Source of the DNA: Haliotis rubra
Lineage: Eukaryota
Direction of reading: 5' to 3'
DNA length: 64,000 nt
NCBI RefSeq assembly: GCF_003918875.1
Contig: NW_025767145.1
Location: forward strand, 372,001 to 436,000
Under the pieces are notes generated by a model. It was not told the origin of the DNA. It made no database searches and saw only the letters and a list, made by a program, of their open reading frames with translations. The position numbers and the translations under genes were made by a program. This document shows positions 1-7,414 of the stretch, in pieces; positions within the stretch are counted from its first letter, which is position 1; each line of letters begins with the position of its first letter.

Positions 1-347
1 CAAGTGGTTCGAGGCATTTGAAAACTGCATTTCAGCTGGAGCGAGAACTGCATTTCAATATAGCAAGAATCTGCAGAAACCGGAATGTGAATTCGAGACA
101 GAGGGATATTCGACATATCCTTCTGAAAGATATTTGACTGGAGTGAGCCATACGTAGTCAAACCTTCATACAGCACTGTGTAGTTAAGGAAATGTAACTG
201 AAGCACTATTTATATCAATGAGTAATAGCGTGTGTTGTGTGCACATGATCTTCGAGCCGTGCGTACGTGCAAAGCTAGTTTACAAATATAGAGACAACAG
301 CAGCACTAAGTCGTAATTCTATCGTCTTAAATCAGTAACGTGCATGC

Positions 348-948
348 TACGGAAGCCTATTAGGGCCACGCTACGCTATTATTCAGCATCTTGTATCTTG
401 AAAATTCAACTTGCTATCTTGAAAATTCAACATCCTTTCTTGAAAATTCAACTTGTTATCTTGAAAATTCAACTTAGTGTCTTGAAAATTCAACTTAGTA
501 TCTTGAAAATTCAACTTAGTATCTTGAAAATTCAACTTAGTATCAACTTAGTATCTTGAAAATTCAACTTAGTATCTTGAAAATTCAACTTGCTATCTTG
601 AAAATTCAACATCCTATCTTGAAAATTCAACTTAGTGTCTTGAAAATTCAACATCCTATCTTGAAAATTCAACATAGTGTCTTGAAAATTCAACTTGCTA
701 TCTTGAAAATTCAACTTAGTACCTTGAAAATTCAACATCCTATCTTGAAAATTCAACTGAACTTTGTTGAATATTCAAGTGAGTATCTTGAATATTCAAC
801 TTGTTATCTTGAAAATTCAAATTAGTATCTTGAAAATTCAACTTAGTATCTTGAAAGTTCAACTTATTATCTTGAAAATTCAACTTGCTATCTTGAAAAT
901 TCAACATCCTTTCTTGAATGTTCAACTTGGTATCTTGAAAATTCAAGA
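348..948 (+). repeat. Left terminal inverted repeat: ~46-bp unique tip plus ~26 copies of 21-bp unit TATCTTGAAAATTCAACTTAG
   Basis: Read directly; explains the heptad-repeat ORFs (LKIQLSI) at 344-985. The array ends in the near-palindrome TCTTGAAAATTCAAGA. Confidence 0.95.
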
Positions 949-1012
949 TATTTCACGTGACATTGCATTGTATTATTTCATTTAGAGTACAGGTTTGATT
1001 GAGGATTCAGAC

Positions 1013-3593
1013 ATGATGTCTTTGGACAATTTCCTCAAATCTCGGGGGATAGAGCAAGAGAATATTGACAAGATGCACACTGATAAGGTATGTTTAATGT
1101 GTTTTATTGAGATTAATGCTTCTTTGAATCTGAGATATAGTCGTTTACATTAACATATATTGTCATATATAATGTGACTCGTGAATATCCGGGTTAGAAT
1201 TGATTTTCAGTAACCCACGCATGTCGAAAGAGGCGACTAACGGAATCAAATGGTCAGGCTCGCTGACTTGGTTGACACATGTCATCGGTTCCCAATTGAT
1301 TGTGTAGATCGATGTTCATGCTGTTGATCACTGGATTGTCTGGTCCAGATACGATTATTCACAGAGCGCCATATAGCTGCAATATTGCTGAGTGTGGTGT
1401 AAATCTAAACTAACTCACTCATATATAATGCAGGCATGGTCAAATATAGCATATTTTGATGTCGCCAATTTAGCATTTTCTATGCAGTATGCTTCATTCA
1501 AAAAAAATGTCCTGAAAATTCTGAAATGTTCCAAAACAAATCTGAAATCATTACATTTTGAAGTTTATTTCATTGCCAGCAGTTCGTTTCAAAGATATAA
1601 TCAAAACTTTACGTTTTAGATTGATGGTCCATGTATAGACCTGATGACTGATGAACAGCTCTCGCAGTATATTCCCGCATTTGGGGACAGATTAGCGCTG
1701 AGAGGATTTGTTAAACCTGTGAAGAGGAAACATGATGAGAGAAAACAAAGCTTATTTGAAAGACTGCGCATGAAACTGAAGAAAGGCTCATCTCCAAGCA
1801 AAGACAACCAATGCGAACAGAAATATGCCCAAGCCAAAAATGCAATGAAGGAAAGCAAAACGGTGGGCATTGGGTTGATGAAATTCGACAGGAAGAAGAA
1901 GTTTTTCGACAAGTTCGGACAAACTCTGGTGGTGGTACACGTAGCACATCATTGCCAAAGACCTCAACAAAACTGGACATTCTGACCTCAGCTAAGACCA
2001 TATTCTTTCCCAACGGAACCTCAGTAAAACTTGGAGAAGAAACGCAGTTTGACTTTGATGTCATGGATTACCAGTTTGTTAAATTAGAGGAGCAGTTCAC
2101 AATACAGCAAATAAGTGAAATAACCAAGATGAAAAATCTTCGGTTCTACCTCATCATCAAAGACAAAGATCTGAGTGAGTTACCTGATGAAACTCCAGGG
2201 CCTAGTAAACCAATATCACCAGGAACTGGAGCCAAAACATCCACTATCACATCCTCGTCTGAGTATGAAGATAAAACAACATGTTACAAAACAACTTCCA
2301 AGAACGACATCCCATTGCATGGAACTGACACATCATCTAATGATTCTCTTCCTTCTCTAACGTCAATAACTAACACCGCTGGCTGGCAACGTGACAGGGG
2401 AGCATGTCACAGAATCCAGTATGGCTGATGTCTTATTGATTGACTCCTTTCCTCCAGTACAATCCTTCACAGCTGAGGTACCTCAGGATCCCACTATAAC
2501 GGAACCTACAGAATCTAGCATTGATATTGATATGCTATTCAGTGAGTTTGAAAATGCACACAACATGGTGAAAAAACATACCATTCGCCTTCACAGAGGA
2601 CATGTCTATGAGGAGTTGATGGCAAAATTCCGAGACGAATCTTTCAATTTTTCAAAAGATCTCTTTACATTGGAAATGGTGCTACCAAATGGCGAGACTG
2701 AAATTGCTGAGGATAACGGGGGTGTTGTACGAGATGCACTTACAGAATTTTGGAAGTCTTTCTGTGATAAATGTACGCTTGGCAATGATTGCAAAGTACC
2801 TTTTCTGAGGCATGATTATTCAGATGCTGATTGGAAGTCAATTGCAACAGTGATTTTCTTCGGCTGGTCTACACAGCGGTACTTCCCTATTTGTTTATCA
2901 AAAGCTTTCATGTCCTGTGCAATCTATGGAATGGACATCTTTTCAGAGAACAAAAAAAACATGATTTCGGATTTTCTCTCGTTTTTGCCGGAAGGTGAAT
3001 CAAGAATCCTTTCTGCAGCACTAAAGGATGATTTTGACCAGGAGGAAGTCATGGACATTCTCGGGTCGCACGAATGTCGTGTGGTTCCAACCAAGGAAAA
3101 TCTGGAGAAGATCCTGGGGGAAATCGCCCACAAGGAAGTGATCCAGCAGCCCATGTATGTAAAAGACTGCGGGTTCAACCAGTTAACAGCTCTTGGTTTC
3201 GATCTGAACACCAGTTTGGAAACACTGTATGTGTCTGCAAAGCCAAATCCCCGCAAAGTGATCAAGATTTTATCTTTTCCAGACGAAATGAGTCCTGTTC
3301 AGAGTGCGACATCTGGCTTCTTAACAAAGTACATCCGGGAACTAAATTCTGATGACTTATCAAAGTTTCTACGTTTTTGTACTGGTTCTGACTTGCTTCT
3401 CACAACTGGCAATGGAGAAAACAAGCCAATATTTGTCAGGTTCAACACCCTGTCAGGGTTATCAAGAAGACCTGTCGGCCATACTTGTGGACAGGTACTG
3501 GACGTACCTGAACAGTATGACAGTTACATTGAATTCAGGGCCGAATTCAACTCACTGCTCAGAAGTGACATTTGGATAATGGACTTTGTGTGA
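1013..3593 (+). pseudogene. Transposon-borne SAM-like + HECT-domain E3 ubiquitin ligase (G2E3-like HECT); exons 1013-1087 and 1620-3593, two apparent frameshifts
   Basis: Exon 1 MMSLDNFLKSRGIEQENIDKMHTDK|gt joins in phase to ag|IDGPCIDLMTDEQLSQYIPAFGDRLALRGF (SAM-like). The frame shifts near 1900 into FRQVRTNSGGGTR...KTIFFPNG and again near 2370-2390 into the 400-aa ORF. That ORF has HECT hallmarks DNGGVVRDALTEFW, KFLRFCTGS and catalytic PVGHTC. AATAAA near 3967. Confidence 0.85.
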
Positions 3594-5239
3594 TTTAATC
3601 CAGCCTGCCACTTTGACTTTTAACACCTCTTTAATCTGAGTTTATGTGAACTTTCTGGAAGTGACTTTATTGTTCACCTTTGTTCTTGTTGTGTGATACA
3701 CAAGTGTTTTTATCATAATCCCTCCCAACATAGAAGATGTTCGTATACAGTATTTTCATTTTAGAATATAGTTTCATTTCAAGTTTCCTTCAAAGGGGTT
3801 ACTGTACAAAATGAAAGATCTCATTCTATATTGATATTTTTATATCATTTTAAAAAGTGTAAAATTATGTTGAAAAATTTATGTGTTACTTCATGCAGGC
3901 AATTGTTGCTAATGATTACTGTTCACTGTTCCAGTTGAGATTGTCACTATGAAGAAAGAGTGAAAAAATAAAACATCTCATTTTGTGTCTTGGTTATCTT
4001 TGACCACTATTAATTTGAGAGCTTAGCTTTGAAATAGGAGGTTGCAATGGAGTGATTGAAGTGGGTTTTAACAAGCACAGCGGTTAGCTGTTTGGCTTTG
4101 GTTCAAGAGGTTCCAGGTTCGAATTCCACCAAGGGCACAACAACTTAGTCTGCAATATTGAGAACTGTTCTACACGCAGTCAGGTTTGGATGCAATGTTA
4201 CACAAAACAAATTGGGGGTGCGAGCATTCTTCCTGCAACAATACAACAGCCGATATAAAGTGAAATATTCTTGAATGCAGTGTTAAACATTTTTATCACG
4301 ACGGCTGGTATTATTGCAGGAAGAGAGCAATGATTGGTTGGAATCAAAGAACCAAGGGTGGTACTACACTGAATCTCAATACTACTAGTACTCAAACTTC
4401 ACTGTCTGCAGAATACAGTTCTCCAATGCAAAGACTCACCGAACCTCTTGGTTCTATGTTTCGCGCTAACCACTGTGACATGTGCTATCATGAGTCTCCC
4501 CTTATCTAAAGTCGGGAACTGTTCTACACTCAGCAAATATACACAGAGCTTCGGGACATGGATTTTCGATGCTGACTTACTGCTAAGATTTGGCGACACC
4601 TATCTTGGTGCTAAGAGAGCTTCGAAAATCTGGGCCCTGAAACTTAAACCTAACTGAGTGCAGAACAGTAACGCCTATGCATGGATCGCTAGCTCCAGTC
4701 GCTGCTGGCAGGTGTCATAGCAGTTAACACAACGGTACATTGGTTGACCATCCTTCCTTACGACACAAATACTAGCCACTGTCATATTAAGAGCAATACT
4801 CTTGAAAGCGGCATAAAACCCCAACTCAATATTAAATTTCATTTAATTTCTTATACCAGATTTAACCGGATTAGCAATCCTGTTCCCTTGCACTTGTAAG
4901 ATTTCAGCTTAAACTGTTTTTCATACCAACCCAACTACAAACAGACATGCTGCTATATCATTTTCAATATTTGAAATTGTTTACATATTTTGCATATTTC
5001 GCTGCTCAAATAATACTATAATATATAACAAGTACCAGTTCTACGAACTGCAGTCAATGGATTGAAAGCAAATGTGAAAAATCTCTTATTTTCTCTGAAC
5101 GAAAAAGACTGAGATGACTATACAATGGCTTTATTCATGAAACATTTCTTCCATTTCTCATGTATGTATCTGCTATGTTCATCTGAGGAGCAAAGGTTGA
5201 TTTTCAGACAGTTTCGTACATCAAAGCTCTTTTCTGATC

Positions 5240-6752
5240 TCACTTCTTGAATGCAAAAGTCAAATTCTTCTTGTCATCGGGAAACTGCCATTGCATGTCC
5301 TCCATGATCAAAGTACACAGTTCATGCACTGTTGGGTCACAGTTCACCTCACCTCTCGGGGTACTCTCCTGTCTACAGAGTTCCAGAGAGGCTGGACACA
5401 CAGGCTTCAAATGATCTTCAGCTCCATAAAGTTGGGGAAGGGAGAATAGAACAGATGGTTTTCCACTAGGATTGTCGGAGTTTTTGTTTGCTCGTATCTG
5501 ATGAAAGTTCCATGTTTGTGCAACATCTTTGATTTCCTTCTGAAATGAAAGGGATGAGTATATGTTACTATTTACTGATAAATATTCGTATCTGGAAAAG
5601 ACAATCCAGTGATTAACAGCATGAACATCGATCTTCGCAATGGGGAACCGACGACATGTGTCAACCAAGCCAGCGAGCCTGACCACCCGATCCCGTTAGT
5701 CGCCTCTTACGACAAGCATAGGTTACTGAAGGCCAATTCTAACCCGGACCTTCACGGGTTACTGATATGACATCAAGTACAACATAGGTGTGATGACATA
5801 ACACATTGACAGATTTTATTGTAAAGTGTCCATGCATGCATACATTTACTTTGAAAACATATTTTAATTCATGTAAATGTCTTATTTGCTTTATATGAAC
5901 ATATGAAAATATAACACCATACCTGAATGACATCAAGGAAACAGAACTGCACCAGGCTCTTGTCAAGGTAGTCTCCACAAAATAAGTCTTCATTTTTCAG
6001 GTGCTTGAACATGTCCATCCAGTATTGCACACACTGCTTTCTCAATATACCCCACCAAAACTCAATACGTTGGTTGTGGACACTTGAGCCATAAAGAAAG
6101 CTTTCACTTCCAGCAAATCTGTCGTTGTGGTCATGTCTAAGCAACAGCTGCATCTGCTCTACATGCCTATTTTCACCACCAGCATCTGATCTGATTCTTT
6201 CTGGGCATCCATGCAGTCGTTCTACAGTGTCAAGATAATATCCAGCTACTACTTTGGGATCGTTGTTTGTCGTCCATGCATCCATCCACAAAACACATCT
6301 AGAAAATCCGTCCACACATCCGTGAATACATATGCCATAAGGTTTCAATTTATCATATCCGTCCATGTGCCAAAGTGCATTTGGGCCGGTTGAAATATAA
6401 CTGCGGCATGCAAGGCGGCATTTCTTGCGATTCCTTACTCCTTCTGGGTCAATTAGATTCATAAGTATCAAAATAGTTTCTTTTGAAACTATGAGTCCGC
6501 TCTCCTGACATTTACGATGCATCCACCTGTAACCATTACAATTACCCGATGTGTCACACTGTTGCAAAATGAACAAAGCCACTTCCATATCAGAATGGCC
6601 TTTTCTCCTGTGAAGTTTGCATTTGGACAAAACCCTTTTCAGTGTCCTTACACTTATAATCATGCCATGATATTGTGCATATTGTGAATTTCGGCGTTAG
6701 ATAATCCTAAGGAAAAATACATAGAGATTATATTGTCTCTGCTTTGCTCCAT
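5240..6752 (-). pseudogene. DDE integrase-core transposase (IS3/IS481-like); exons ~6752-5923 and 5539-5240, frameshift near 6680
   Basis: Motifs WHMDGYDKLKPYGICIHGCVDGFSR (D), RIRSDAGGEN (D), GSSVHNQRIEFWW (E). N-terminal HTH-like MEQSRDNIISMYFSLGLSNAEI.../GMIISVRTLKR. Phase-0 intron FLDVIQ|gt...ag|KEIKDVAQTWNFHQIR. PolyA signal near 5130. Confidence 0.88.
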
Positions 6753-6836
6753 TGTCATATGTCATACACAGTTCGTGTACAGAGAATTTGGAAAAGCGCA
6801 TAATGAACGAAGAACATTTCATTTAAGTACTAATTT

Positions 6837-7173
6837 TCTTGAATTTTCAAGATAGGATGTTGAATTTTCAAGATACTAAGTTGAAATTTCAAGATAGCAA
6901 GTTGAATTTTCAAGATACTAAGTTGAATTTTCAAGATAACAAGTTGAATTTTCAAGATAGCAAGTTGAATTTTCAAGATAGTAAGTTGAATTTTCAAGAT
7001 ACTAAGTTGAATTTTCAAGATAGTAAGTTGAATTTTCAAGATACTAAGTTGAATTTTCAAGATACTAAGTTGAATTTTCAAGATAACAAGTTGAATGTTC
7101 AAGATAGCAAGTTGAATTTTCAAGATACAAGATGCTGAATAATAGCGTAGCGTGGCCCTAATAGGCTTCCGTA
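6837..7173 (-). repeat. Right terminal inverted repeat: ~14 copies of the same 21-bp unit plus unique tip
   Basis: Reverse complement of the left end; same tip and same array-terminating palindrome. Confidence 0.95.
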
Positions 7174-7243
7174 GCATGCAGATCGGAGCATGAGCTGAAA
7201 ACAGAAAGGGGTTTTTGCATGGCTGTACTCTATTTATAGATTA

Positions 7244-7414
7244 GGGGCGGTGGGGTAGCCTAGTGGTTAAAGTGATGTCTCGTCACGCCGAACACCCGGG
7301 TTCGATTCCCCACATGGGTACAATGTGTGAAGCCCATTTCTGGTTGTTCCCCGCCGTGATATTGCGGGAATATAGCTAAAAGCGGCGTAAAACTAAATCC
7401 ACTCACTCACTCAC
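7244..7414 (+). mobile_element. tRNA-derived SINE family A (representative; further copies near 7667, 9975, 10980, 13680, 14125, 15306, 16215, 18472, 37770, 43513, 45232, 46417, 47982, 57939, 60082, 61385)
   Basis: Pol III A/B boxes (GTAGCCTAGTGGTTAAAG...GGTTCGATTCCC), shared body, (ACTC)n or (CAGT)n tail. Confidence 0.9.

What the first reader, a model, noticed from the sequence alone, without database searches (positions are those of the whole stretch)
394..948. TIR arrays are phased 21-bp repeats of a heat-shock-element-like GAAnnTTC core placed directly upstream of both transposon genes
Seen: nearly every full unit contains the palindrome TTGAAnnTTCAA. Core variants change the two central bases (GAAAATTC, GAATATTC, GAAAGTTC, GAATGTTC, GAAATTTC) and keep GAA/TTC. 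Perfect three-box TTCnnGAAnnTTC sites occur at 437-449, 911-923 and 6836-6848; most other units are one mismatch away (ATCTTGAAAATTC). The 21-bp period is two helical turns, so sites share one DNA face. The arrays end 65 bp from the HECT ATG and ~85 bp from the transposase ATG. Established: HSF binds inverted nGAAn arrays, and heat-activated TEs with HSEs exist (ONSEN in Arabidopsis). Inference: the ends may act both as transposase-binding arrays and as heat-inducible promoters that co-activate both genes. A plain transposase-dimer site explains the palindrome equally well.
Basis: partly seen in the sequence, partly recalled or inferred. Interest (0 to 1): 0.72.

Follow-up and report, generated by a model that had tools for sequence, protein, structure and literature searches.

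The report
Transposon end arrays resembling heat-shock elements
The 21-bp repeats at both ends of this abalone jumping gene are real and look like heat-shock elements, but related elements carry the same arrays with quite different palindromes, so they are most likely the element's own protein-docking sites and the heat-shock resemblance a coincidence.

Summary
A 6.8-kb DNA transposon of Haliotis rubra lies at window 348-7173, flanked by a 6-bp target duplication GCATGC. Its ends hold 26 and 14 tandem 21-bp units. All 40 units keep TTGAA-nn-TTCAA. The three perfect TTCnnGAAnnTTC sites and the 65 and 86 bp gaps to the two start codons are as stated.

The heat-shock reading is not supported. I fetched relatives from abalone, oysters, a fish, a frog, a crinoid and one unidentified organism (a public assembly). 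All share the same layout: a conserved terminus (TACGGAAG...GGCCA in most), an A/T run, then 4-83 units of 20-22 bp ahead of the transposase gene. A HECT-like gene faces the transposase gene in all that could be checked.

The palindrome inside the unit is family-specific. Six lineages have no GAAnnTTC. A seventh keeps only the outer TTG...CAA arms, with GAAnnTTC in 14 of 83 units. The palindrome tracks transposase relatedness. The "third box" ATC belongs to a frame shared by most of the lineages, including ones without GAA/TTC.

Best reading: subterminal docking sites for an element-encoded protein, in an element with the IS3EU/GingerRoot hallmarks, placed at the promoters of both genes. HSF co-option in abalone is not excluded (about 7%). 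RNA data were uninformative.

The scan had noted this element before, but only on this same window.

The parts
342..347 (.). Left copy of the 6-bp target site duplication, GCATGC
   Evidence: Identical hexamer at 7174-7179 directly outside both termini. The terminus was placed by comparison with a second copy in L001 that has different flanks.
348..393 (+). Left terminal unique part of the TIR, beginning TACGGAAGCC
   Evidence: Inverted match to 7128-7173. The terminal motif TACGGAAG...GGCCA recurs in most of the fetched relatives.
394..948 (+). Left subterminal array: 26 units of 21 bp, consensus TATC TTGAAAATTCAA CTTAGT
949..1012 (+). 64-bp gap between array and HECT-gene ATG. The core promoter and 5' UTR must lie here or in the array. 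It contains CACGTG at 955-960.
   Evidence: Sequence read directly. A promoter role is inferred from position only.
1013..3593 (+). HECT-like companion gene (several exons; last exon ORF 2391-3593)
   Evidence: Pfam HECT PF00632, E 4.8e-07. tblastn finds a homologue facing the transposase gene in all relatives that could be checked.
5240..6752 (-). Transposase gene (integrase-like DDE; exons within ORFs 5869-6663 and 5240-5686, plus a short N-terminal stretch from ATG 6752 that is out of frame with the rest)
   Evidence: Pfam rva_4 PF24764, E 4.7e-32. 100% identical to a Haliotis rubra protein record. Invariant D101, D160, E201. The frame break near 6663 is shared with copy 2.
6753..6837 (-). 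85-bp gap between right array and transposase ATG
   Evidence: Nearly identical in copy 2 (L001).
6838..7127 (-). Right subterminal array: 14 units of 21 bp, same unit in inverted orientation
7128..7173 (-). Right terminal unique part of the TIR, ending ...GGCTTCCGTA
7174..7179 (.). Right copy of the target site duplication, GCATGC

Best explanation
The arrays are the subterminal part of a two-part terminal inverted repeat in a DNA transposon that has the hallmarks of the IS3EU/GingerRoot superfamily. The outer ~25 bp (TACGGAAG...GGCCA) recurs in most of the fetched lineages, across phyla, and is probably the site where the catalytic core cuts and pairs the ends (inferred). Inside it, after an A/T run, lie many copies of a 20-22-bp unit. 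Each unit carries a family-specific palindrome in a partly conserved frame (TATC-T...A-G/C-TTAGT in most of the mollusc families). The palindrome is most likely read by a dimer of an element-encoded protein. The best candidate is the transposase N-terminal region, which is predicted to form two small helix-turn-helix-like modules (inferred). The two-turn spacing puts all sites on one DNA face, so many protein copies could load side by side and mark the ends as 'own family' (inferred). In molluscs the arrays stop 43-118 bp before the start codons fetched here (43-88 bp on the transposase side). The same bound protein would therefore sit on or next to the promoters of both genes and could regulate them, as is known for Tn7, En/Spm and the P element (inferred from position). 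In abalone families A, B and C the palindrome happens to be TTGAAnnTTCAA. Together with the frame's ATC this mimics a heat-shock element.
For: 1) The same architecture appears in eight lineages from six species plus one unidentified organism. The arrays are: H. rubra A (26/14 units; 8 in copy 2), B (10/4), C (fragment), D (28/16), Saccostrea (32), Magallana gigas (38-39), Synchiropus (17-19/11-17), Xenopus (17), an unidentified organism's contig L009 (83) and Antedon (34/32). All have a 20-22-bp period.
2) The cores differ by family: TTGAAAATTCAA, TTGAAATTTCAA, TCCTAATTAGGA, TCGTTATAACGA, TGTTCGGACGAA, TCAGAATTCTGA, TCATAATTATGA and, in Antedon, AATTCGTTTAAACGAATT.
3) The core tracks transposase kinship. 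The two closest pairs share related cores: A-B at 63% identity, and fish-frog at 65%. Fish and frog differ by a symmetric change in both half-sites. All pairs at 46-54% have unrelated cores, apart from L009, which shares only the outer arms with A and B.
4) In L009 the TTG-N6-CAA arms are kept in 83 of 83 units, while the inner bases vary.
5) Family B carries the unit flipped relative to the terminus, as expected for a symmetric reader.
6) The conserved footprint in the window is TTGAA/TTCAA plus the frame, which is wider than nGAAn.
7) The transposase N-terminal 118 residues fold with confidence (pLDDT 83.6) into two three-helix modules. These weakly resemble DNA-binding HTH and winged-helix domains, including transposase HTHs.
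8) TA..TA termini and 6-bp TSDs fit IS3EU/GingerRoot (PMC6839031, PMC10045372).
Against: No binding experiment exists, and nothing here shows which protein reads the palindrome. The most conserved part of the transposase N-terminus hardly varies between families with unrelated palindromes, so the specificity determinants are not identified. The fold matches are in the range of common helical arrangements (Z 6-7.5; Foldseek E > 0.1). Tandem arrays are homogenised by unequal exchange, so within-array invariance overstates selection. Both family-A copies have the first ~30 codons out of frame, so this copy may not make a full DNA-binding domain itself. The promoter role rests on position alone; no transcript 5' ends were available.
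Confidence: 0.7

Rival explanations
1. One reading: the units are functional heat-shock elements. HSF trimers bind the arrays on heat stress and switch on both the HECT gene and the transposase gene.
For: Each unit has two perfect inverted nGAAn boxes plus a third box GAT/ATC in the correct 5-bp register. Three units are perfect TTCnnGAAnnTTC sites. Family C units form an 18-bp palindrome with four boxes in register. The core is kept in three abalone families whose transposases (A versus B) are about 40% diverged. The arrays lie 43-118 bp from the start codons. TE-borne HSEs are real elsewhere: Helitrons in Caenorhabditis (PMC6927752) and ONSEN (PMC13602373).
Against: GAAnnTTC and three-box sites number zero in the arrays of six related lineages with the same architecture. 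In L009 only 14 of 83 units have GAAnnTTC, while the outer arms are invariant. The ATC 'third box' also stands in most of the lineages that lack GAA/TTC, so it was not selected for HSF. The TT and AA bases flanking GAA/TTC are invariant, which HSF does not require. Roughly 1 random even palindrome in 64 has GAA-nn-TTC at its centre. With eight lineages and many known palindromic factor sites, one look-alike is expected; family D and Xenopus resemble homeodomain TAATTA sites in the same way. There is no heat or RNA evidence.
Confidence: 0.07
2. The palindromes are read not by the transposase but by the conserved HECT-like companion protein or a complex containing it. For example, this could recruit ubiquitin ligase activity to the ends or to the transpososome.
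For: The HECT-like gene accompanies the transposase in all relatives that could be checked, from molluscs to frog. It therefore co-evolves with the arrays just as the transposase does. The conserved parts of the transposase N-terminus vary little between families with different palindromes.
Against: No DNA-binding domain was detected in the companion gene; only HECT was found by Pfam, and its N-terminal exons were not analysed in depth. In other DNA transposons the subterminal repeats are read by the transposase or a DNA-binding accessory protein, not by a ligase (my own knowledge).
Confidence: 0.1
3. Each family has captured the site of a different host transcription factor (HSF-like in A-C, homeodomain-like TAATTA in D and Xenopus, and so on). 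On this reading the arrays are enhancers rather than transposition sites.
For: The arrays abut the 5' ends of both genes in every family. Several cores resemble known factor sites.
Against: Several cores resemble no common factor site that I know. It is unlikely that eight lineages each captured a different host factor while keeping the same frame, period and position. The arrays are part of the inverted terminal repeats, where transposition signals lie.
Confidence: 0.05
4. The arrays are functionless satellite-like expansions of a short palindrome-prone sequence inside the TIRs.
For: Unit number varies strongly between ends and between 98%-identical copies (26, 14 and 8 units). IS3EU-annotated satellites are listed for the Pacific oyster (PMC8268682).
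Against: Period, palindromic nature, frame, position and presence at both ends are kept across phyla while the surrounding sequence has diverged completely.
Confidence: 0.05

Closest known systems
[quoted passage not shown]
   Same: Integrase-like DDE transposase without an HHCC zinc finger, TA..TA termini and a 6-bp target duplication that here is GC-rich. The taxon range also fits: fish, oysters and other aquatic animals.
   Different: The published descriptions give 100-150-bp TIRs. Neither paper's main text contains the terms 'tandem repeat', 'subterminal' or 'HECT'. Here the TIRs are 336-600 bp, mostly made of arrays, and the lineage carries a conserved second gene.
Tn7 TnsB-binding sites and phage Mu MuA end sites (my own knowledge)
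   Same: An rve-type DDE transposase, several ~22-bp binding sites inside each end, and different numbers at the two ends. In Tn7 the right-end sites overlap the transposase promoter and give autoregulation.
   Different: Those ends hold 3-4 non-palindromic sites, not 4-83 palindromic units in strict tandem. They are bacterial.
En/Spm (CACTA) subterminal 12-bp TnpA motifs, Ac hexamers and Hermes subterminal repeats (my own knowledge)
   Same: Many short motifs in the subterminal regions are bound by an element protein. In En/Spm the promoter lies among them and the bound protein regulates it.
   Different: Those motifs are scattered in both orientations, not phased tandem units. The superfamilies are unrelated.
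TE-borne heat-shock elements: Caenorhabditis Helitrons (PMC6927752) and Arabidopsis ONSEN LTRs (PMC13602373, PMC8376061)
   Same: Repeated nGAAn-type motifs inside a mobile element and close to its promoter.
   Different: In those cases HSF binding and heat induction were shown. Here neither is shown, and relatives lack the motif. By the strict pattern NGAANNTTCNNGAAN used in PMC6927752, only 3 of the 40 units qualify.
Human satellite III repeats bound by HSF1 in nuclear stress bodies (my own knowledge)
   Same: A tandem array that can soak up HSF on heat stress.
   Different: That is a pericentromeric satellite, not transposon ends. It is relevant only to the unproven co-option reading.

Membership tests
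Heat-shock element (HSF-binding site) | At least three contiguous inverted nGAAn pentamers (NGAANNTTCNNGAAN, as used in PMC6927752) | tested here: inconclusive
   Three perfect sites (437, 911, 6836). The other 38 three-box windows have one mismatch, with GAT/ATC as the third box.
Heat-shock element (HSF-binding site) | GAA/TTC triplets are the selected positions, so they should persist in related elements with the same array | tested here: not met
   Zero GAAnnTTC in the arrays of family D, Saccostrea, M. gigas, Synchiropus, Xenopus and Antedon. In L009, 14 of 83 units have it while the TTG...CAA arms are invariant.
Heat-shock element (HSF-binding site) | HSF occupancy and heat-induced transcription | not testable with these tools
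   No run on record as RNA holds the element. Only two small low-depth contigs lie on transposase exons, in one run that is only guessed to be RNA.
IS3EU/GingerRoot DNA transposons | Integrase-like DDE transposase lacking the HHCC zinc finger | tested here: met
   Pfam rva_4, E 4.7e-32. Invariant D101, D160, E201. The N-terminus is helical with no Cys/His motif.
IS3EU/GingerRoot DNA transposons | 5'-TA...TA-3' termini | tested here: met
   TACGG... and ...CCGTA in the window and in L001, L002 and L004-L009; L003 begins TACGA.
IS3EU/GingerRoot DNA transposons | 6-bp target site duplication | tested here: met
   GCATGC in the window and GGTCAG in L006. The two fish copies are off by one base at one end.
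IS3EU/GingerRoot DNA transposons | Transposase groups with reference IS3EU/GingerRoot sequences in a tree | not tested
The assignment rests on the three features above and on the taxon range.
Subterminal transposase-binding repeats | Repeated motif inside both ends, inverted between the ends | tested here: met
   The same holds in L004, L005, L006 and L010.
Subterminal transposase-binding repeats | Motif co-varies with the element's own protein lineage | tested here: met
   Related cores occur only in the closest transposase pairs (A-B 63%, fish-frog 65%). L009 (53-54%) shares only the outer arms with A and B. All other pairs have unrelated cores.
Subterminal transposase-binding repeats | Direct binding by the transposase | not testable with these tools
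   Only a predicted two-module helical N-terminal domain with weak HTH-type fold matches.

The most novel reading that the evidence does not exclude
In abalone, one lineage of this transposon group (families A, B, C) has a docking palindrome that doubles as a working heat-shock element. Arrays of 4-26 HSF sites would then make both the transposase and the HECT gene heat-inducible. Family D in the same genome, with the same architecture but a TAATTA core, would be a built-in negative control.
Probability: 0.07. Interest if true: 0.6.

Novelty: new member of a known kind. Interest (0 to 1): 0.3.

Why it matters
As a heat-shock claim it matters little, because the resemblance is best explained by chance. 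The comparison did bring out a feature that the papers I could search do not mention. This animal lineage, which has the IS3EU/GingerRoot hallmarks, has a two-part end: a terminus conserved across phyla plus long phased arrays of a family-specific palindrome, set against the starts of two conserved convergent genes (transposase and a HECT-like ligase). That offers a simple system for asking how co-resident transposon families avoid cross-mobilisation, and how a transposase might regulate its own genes. If HSF did bind the abalone arrays, it would be a first case of a heat-wired cut-and-paste transposon in a mollusc that suffers heat mortality in aquaculture.

Tried and rejected
- RNA evidence. 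The run search found no holder on record as RNA. Laying four runs gave only two small low-depth contigs on transposase exons (5261-5446, 6199-6509) in one run guessed to be RNA, and nothing on the HECT gene. The very high depths at 1100-1500, 4500-4700 and 5500-5900 come from unrelated short repeats. Nothing can be said about heat response or transcript starts.
- Positive control for the HSE scan. The region next to an HSP70 gene fragment in L007 gave one near-match only. The true promoter is probably outside the locus, so I dropped this control.
- Fold search. Foldseek against the PDB gave no match at E <= 0.001. The top rows are bipartite HTH domains of MuA, Hsmar1 and Mos1 at E 0.3-0.5. The wide search gave Z 6-7.5 to winged-helix and HTH domains, which is within the range of common helical arrangements. 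I use this only as 'consistent with DNA binding'.
- Missing relatives. P0014 has no DNA available and P0072 is not on record.
- Earlier findings of the scan. The search by sequence gave nothing. The searches by place and by words returned only notes on this window and an unrelated element.
- Ginger2/TDD, my first guess for the superfamily. I rejected it because Ginger2 has TGTNR termini, an H2C2 zinc finger and 4-5-bp TSDs (PMC2836005), none of which are seen here.
- Literature on heat-induced HECT-type ligase genes in Haliotis. No paper was found.

Full report
**What is there.**
The window comes from the blacklip abalone, Haliotis rubra: the transposase ORF is 100% identical to a protein record of that species. 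Positions 348-7173 are one DNA transposon. Its termini read TACGGAAGCC... and ...GGCTTCCGTA, and the hexamer GCATGC stands directly outside both (342-347 and 7174-7179). I placed the termini by comparison with a second copy in another contig. That copy (L001 9322-15197) is 98.4% identical and has different flanks.

The element carries two convergent genes. One is a HECT-like gene on the plus strand (ATG 1013; Pfam HECT, E 4.8e-07). The other is an integrase-like DDE transposase on the minus strand (ATG 6752; Pfam rva_4, E 4.7e-32).

- Tandem Repeats Finder reports the 21-bp arrays at 393-946 and 6839-7127.
- There are 26 and 14 units. Spacing is 21 bp except one 32 (an extra 11-bp partial unit) and one 22.
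- Every unit keeps GAAnnTTC. The listed core variants and the three perfect TTCnnGAAnnTTC sites at 437, 911 and 6836 are all present. Another 38 three-box windows are one mismatch away.
- The 16-mer of the unit occurs 38 times at up to 2 mismatches, against 0.15 expected, and nowhere else in the window.
- Over the 40 units, the ten bases TTGAA and TTCAA never change, the two central bases change 7 times, and the 5-bp spacer is the most variable part.
- The distances to the start codons are 65 and 86 bp.

The enrichment is real, but it comes from tandem duplication of a single unit. It counts as one motif occurrence, not forty.

**The comparative test.**
I used homologues of the transposase to fetch the DNA around relatives. 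Every locus with usable DNA shows the same layout. A conserved terminus (TACGGAAG...GGCCA in most, weaker in the two oysters) is followed by an A/T-rich run, then a long tandem array with a 20-22-bp period that ends shortly before the transposase gene.

The unit consensus of each lineage is as follows:

| Lineage | Unit consensus |
|---|---|
| A (window) | TATC TTGAAAATTCAA CTTAGT |
| B (abalone, transposase 60-63% identical) | same, with a central AT |
| C (abalone fragment) | 18-bp palindrome ATCTTGAAAATTCAAGAT |
| D (abalone, 49-54%) | TATC TCCTAATTAGGA GTTACT |
| Saccostrea | TATC TCGTTATAACGA GTTAGT |
| Magallana gigas | TATT TGTTCGGACGAA TTAG |
| Synchiropus (fish) | aatc TCAGAATTCTGA CTTTAA |
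| Xenopus | AAtc TCATAATTATGA CTTTTA |
| Antedon (crinoid) | AATTCGTTTAAACGAATT |
| L009 (unidentified organism, public assembly) | 83 units at exactly 21 bp; only the arms TTG-N6-CAA are fixed |

GAAnnTTC and HSE-like three-box windows number zero in the arrays of D, Saccostrea, M. gigas, Synchiropus, Xenopus and Antedon. In L009, 14 of 83 units carry GAAnnTTC.

**What this says about the heat-shock reading.**
Four points weigh against it.
- The palindrome is a family-specific variable inside an architecture shared by all eight lineages. If HSF binding were the selected function, the GAA and TTC triplets should be the conserved part, because HSF specificity is conserved across eukaryotes. Instead they are replaced wholesale.
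- The "third box" ATC that makes most units near-perfect HSEs belongs to the frame. It also stands in families D, Saccostrea, fish and frog, so it was not selected for HSF.
- In L009, whose core is nearest to A and B, the constraint sits on the outer arms. The inner bases drift to GTA, GTT and AAC, which would break nGAAn boxes.
- The invariant footprint in the window is TTGAA/TTCAA plus the frame. That is wider than HSF needs, and it is what a 5-bp half-site with a free 2-bp spacer would give.

About 1 random even palindrome in 64 has GAA-nn-TTC at its centre (my estimate). With eight lineages and many known palindromic factor sites, one look-alike is expected. Family D and Xenopus look like homeodomain TAATTA sites in the same way.

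**What the arrays most likely are.**
- The core follows the transposase tree. The two closest pairs have related cores. A and B (63% identity) share TTGAAnnTTCAA. Fish and frog (65%) share TCAnAATTnTGA and differ by a symmetric change in both half-sites.
- Pairs at 46-54% have unrelated cores, apart from L009, which keeps only the outer arms of A and B. Symmetric change is what a homodimeric reader predicts.
- Family B carries the whole unit flipped relative to the terminus, compared with A and the other lineages. This again fits a symmetric reader.
- The transposase N-terminal 118 residues fold with confidence (pLDDT 83.6) into two three-helix modules. Their fold matches are weak but are DNA-binding HTH or winged-helix domains, including transposase HTHs. 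A sub-threshold Pfam hit to HTH_21, the domain that precedes rve in IS3-type transposases, points the same way.

I therefore read the arrays as subterminal docking sites for an element-encoded protein, most likely the transposase. They would set family identity, while the conserved terminus serves catalysis. Binding itself is inferred, not shown.

**Position at the promoters.**
In molluscs the arrays end 43-88 bp before the transposase ATG and 55-118 bp before the HECT-gene ATG. In the vertebrates the gap is 200-500 bp, and in the crinoid about 1 kb to the called gene start. The core promoters must therefore lie in that short gap or in the arrays. It also makes autoregulation by the bound protein plausible, as in Tn7, En/Spm and the P element (my own knowledge). 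No transcript starts were available, so this remains inference.

**Classification.**
TA..TA termini, a 6-bp target duplication (GCATGC here, GGTCAG in L006), a DDE integrase-like transposase without a zinc finger, and the taxon range all match IS3EU/GingerRoot (PMC6839031; PMC10045372). They do not match Ginger2, which has TGTNR termini, a zinc finger and 4-5-bp TSDs (PMC2836005). A tree with reference sequences was not made.

Neither paper's main text contains the terms 'tandem repeat', 'subterminal' or 'HECT'. [quoted passage not shown] IS3EU-annotated satellites in the Pacific oyster (PMC8268682) suggest that such arrays have been seen only as satellites.

**RNA.**
No run on record as RNA holds the element. 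One run guessed to be RNA has two small low-depth contigs on transposase exons and none on the HECT gene. This says nothing about heat.

**Verdict.**
The element is an ordinary member of a known kind of DNA transposon, with an end architecture that the papers I could search do not mention. HSF co-option in the abalone families cannot be excluded, and I put it at about 7%. Family D in the same genome offers a clean natural control.

Noticed in passing
L003 16014-16982, L004/L005 12033-13007, L006 17542-18520, L007 17396-18364, L008 22582-23556: A HECT-like gene facing the transposase gene is present in every relative with enough DNA, from oysters to fish and frog (30-45% identity to the window's HECT exon). 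The two-gene layout is an old, conserved feature of this lineage, not a recent capture.
   Followed up: partly
window 348-372; L001 9322; L002 9700; L004 9126; L006 9323; L007 9094; L008 9368; L009 8138: The outermost ~25 bp of the TIR (TACGGAAG, about 6-8 variable bases, then GGCCA or a near variant) recurs in most lineages across molluscs, fish, frog and an unidentified organism. The arrays just inside it differ completely. It is weaker in the two oysters.
   Followed up: partly
L002 16430-16440 and L001 9196-9322: Copies of different families lie against each other. A family B end (lacking its last 5 bp) abuts a family C array in L002. In L001 a family B end lies 125 bp from a family A end. 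This may reflect insertion preference for related elements or for their arrays.
   Followed up: no
window 6655-6752 (minus strand); L001 9616-9712: In both family A copies the first ~30 codons (MEQSRDNIISMYFSLGLSNAEI...) are out of frame with the rest of the transposase. Copy 2 has a further one-base difference. The public gene model starts at the downstream Met. Both copies may lack a complete N-terminal DNA-binding module.
   Followed up: partly
window 1174-1359 and 5581-5762; also 4500-4700 and 7230-7400: Short, very high-copy repeats (SINE/MITE-like, one with a tRNA-like head at about 7230-7300) sit in the element and just outside it. The pair at 1174-1359 and 5581-5762 is inverted. They dominate read depth in all runs.
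   Followed up: no
window 955-960: A CACGTG E-box lies in the 64-bp gap between the left array and the HECT-gene ATG.
   Followed up: no
window 342-347; L004 9120-9125 and its right flank: The target duplication GCATGC of the abalone copy is the same palindromic hexamer that flanks one fish copy. Another fish copy sits in AATATT. This is a possible preference for palindromic targets, but there are too few cases to judge.
   Followed up: no
L007 1-1225: An HSP70 gene fragment lies about 8 kb from the Magallana gigas element. I take this as coincidence, since that element's array has no HSE-like core.
   Followed up: partly
I did not examine it.
   Followed up: no
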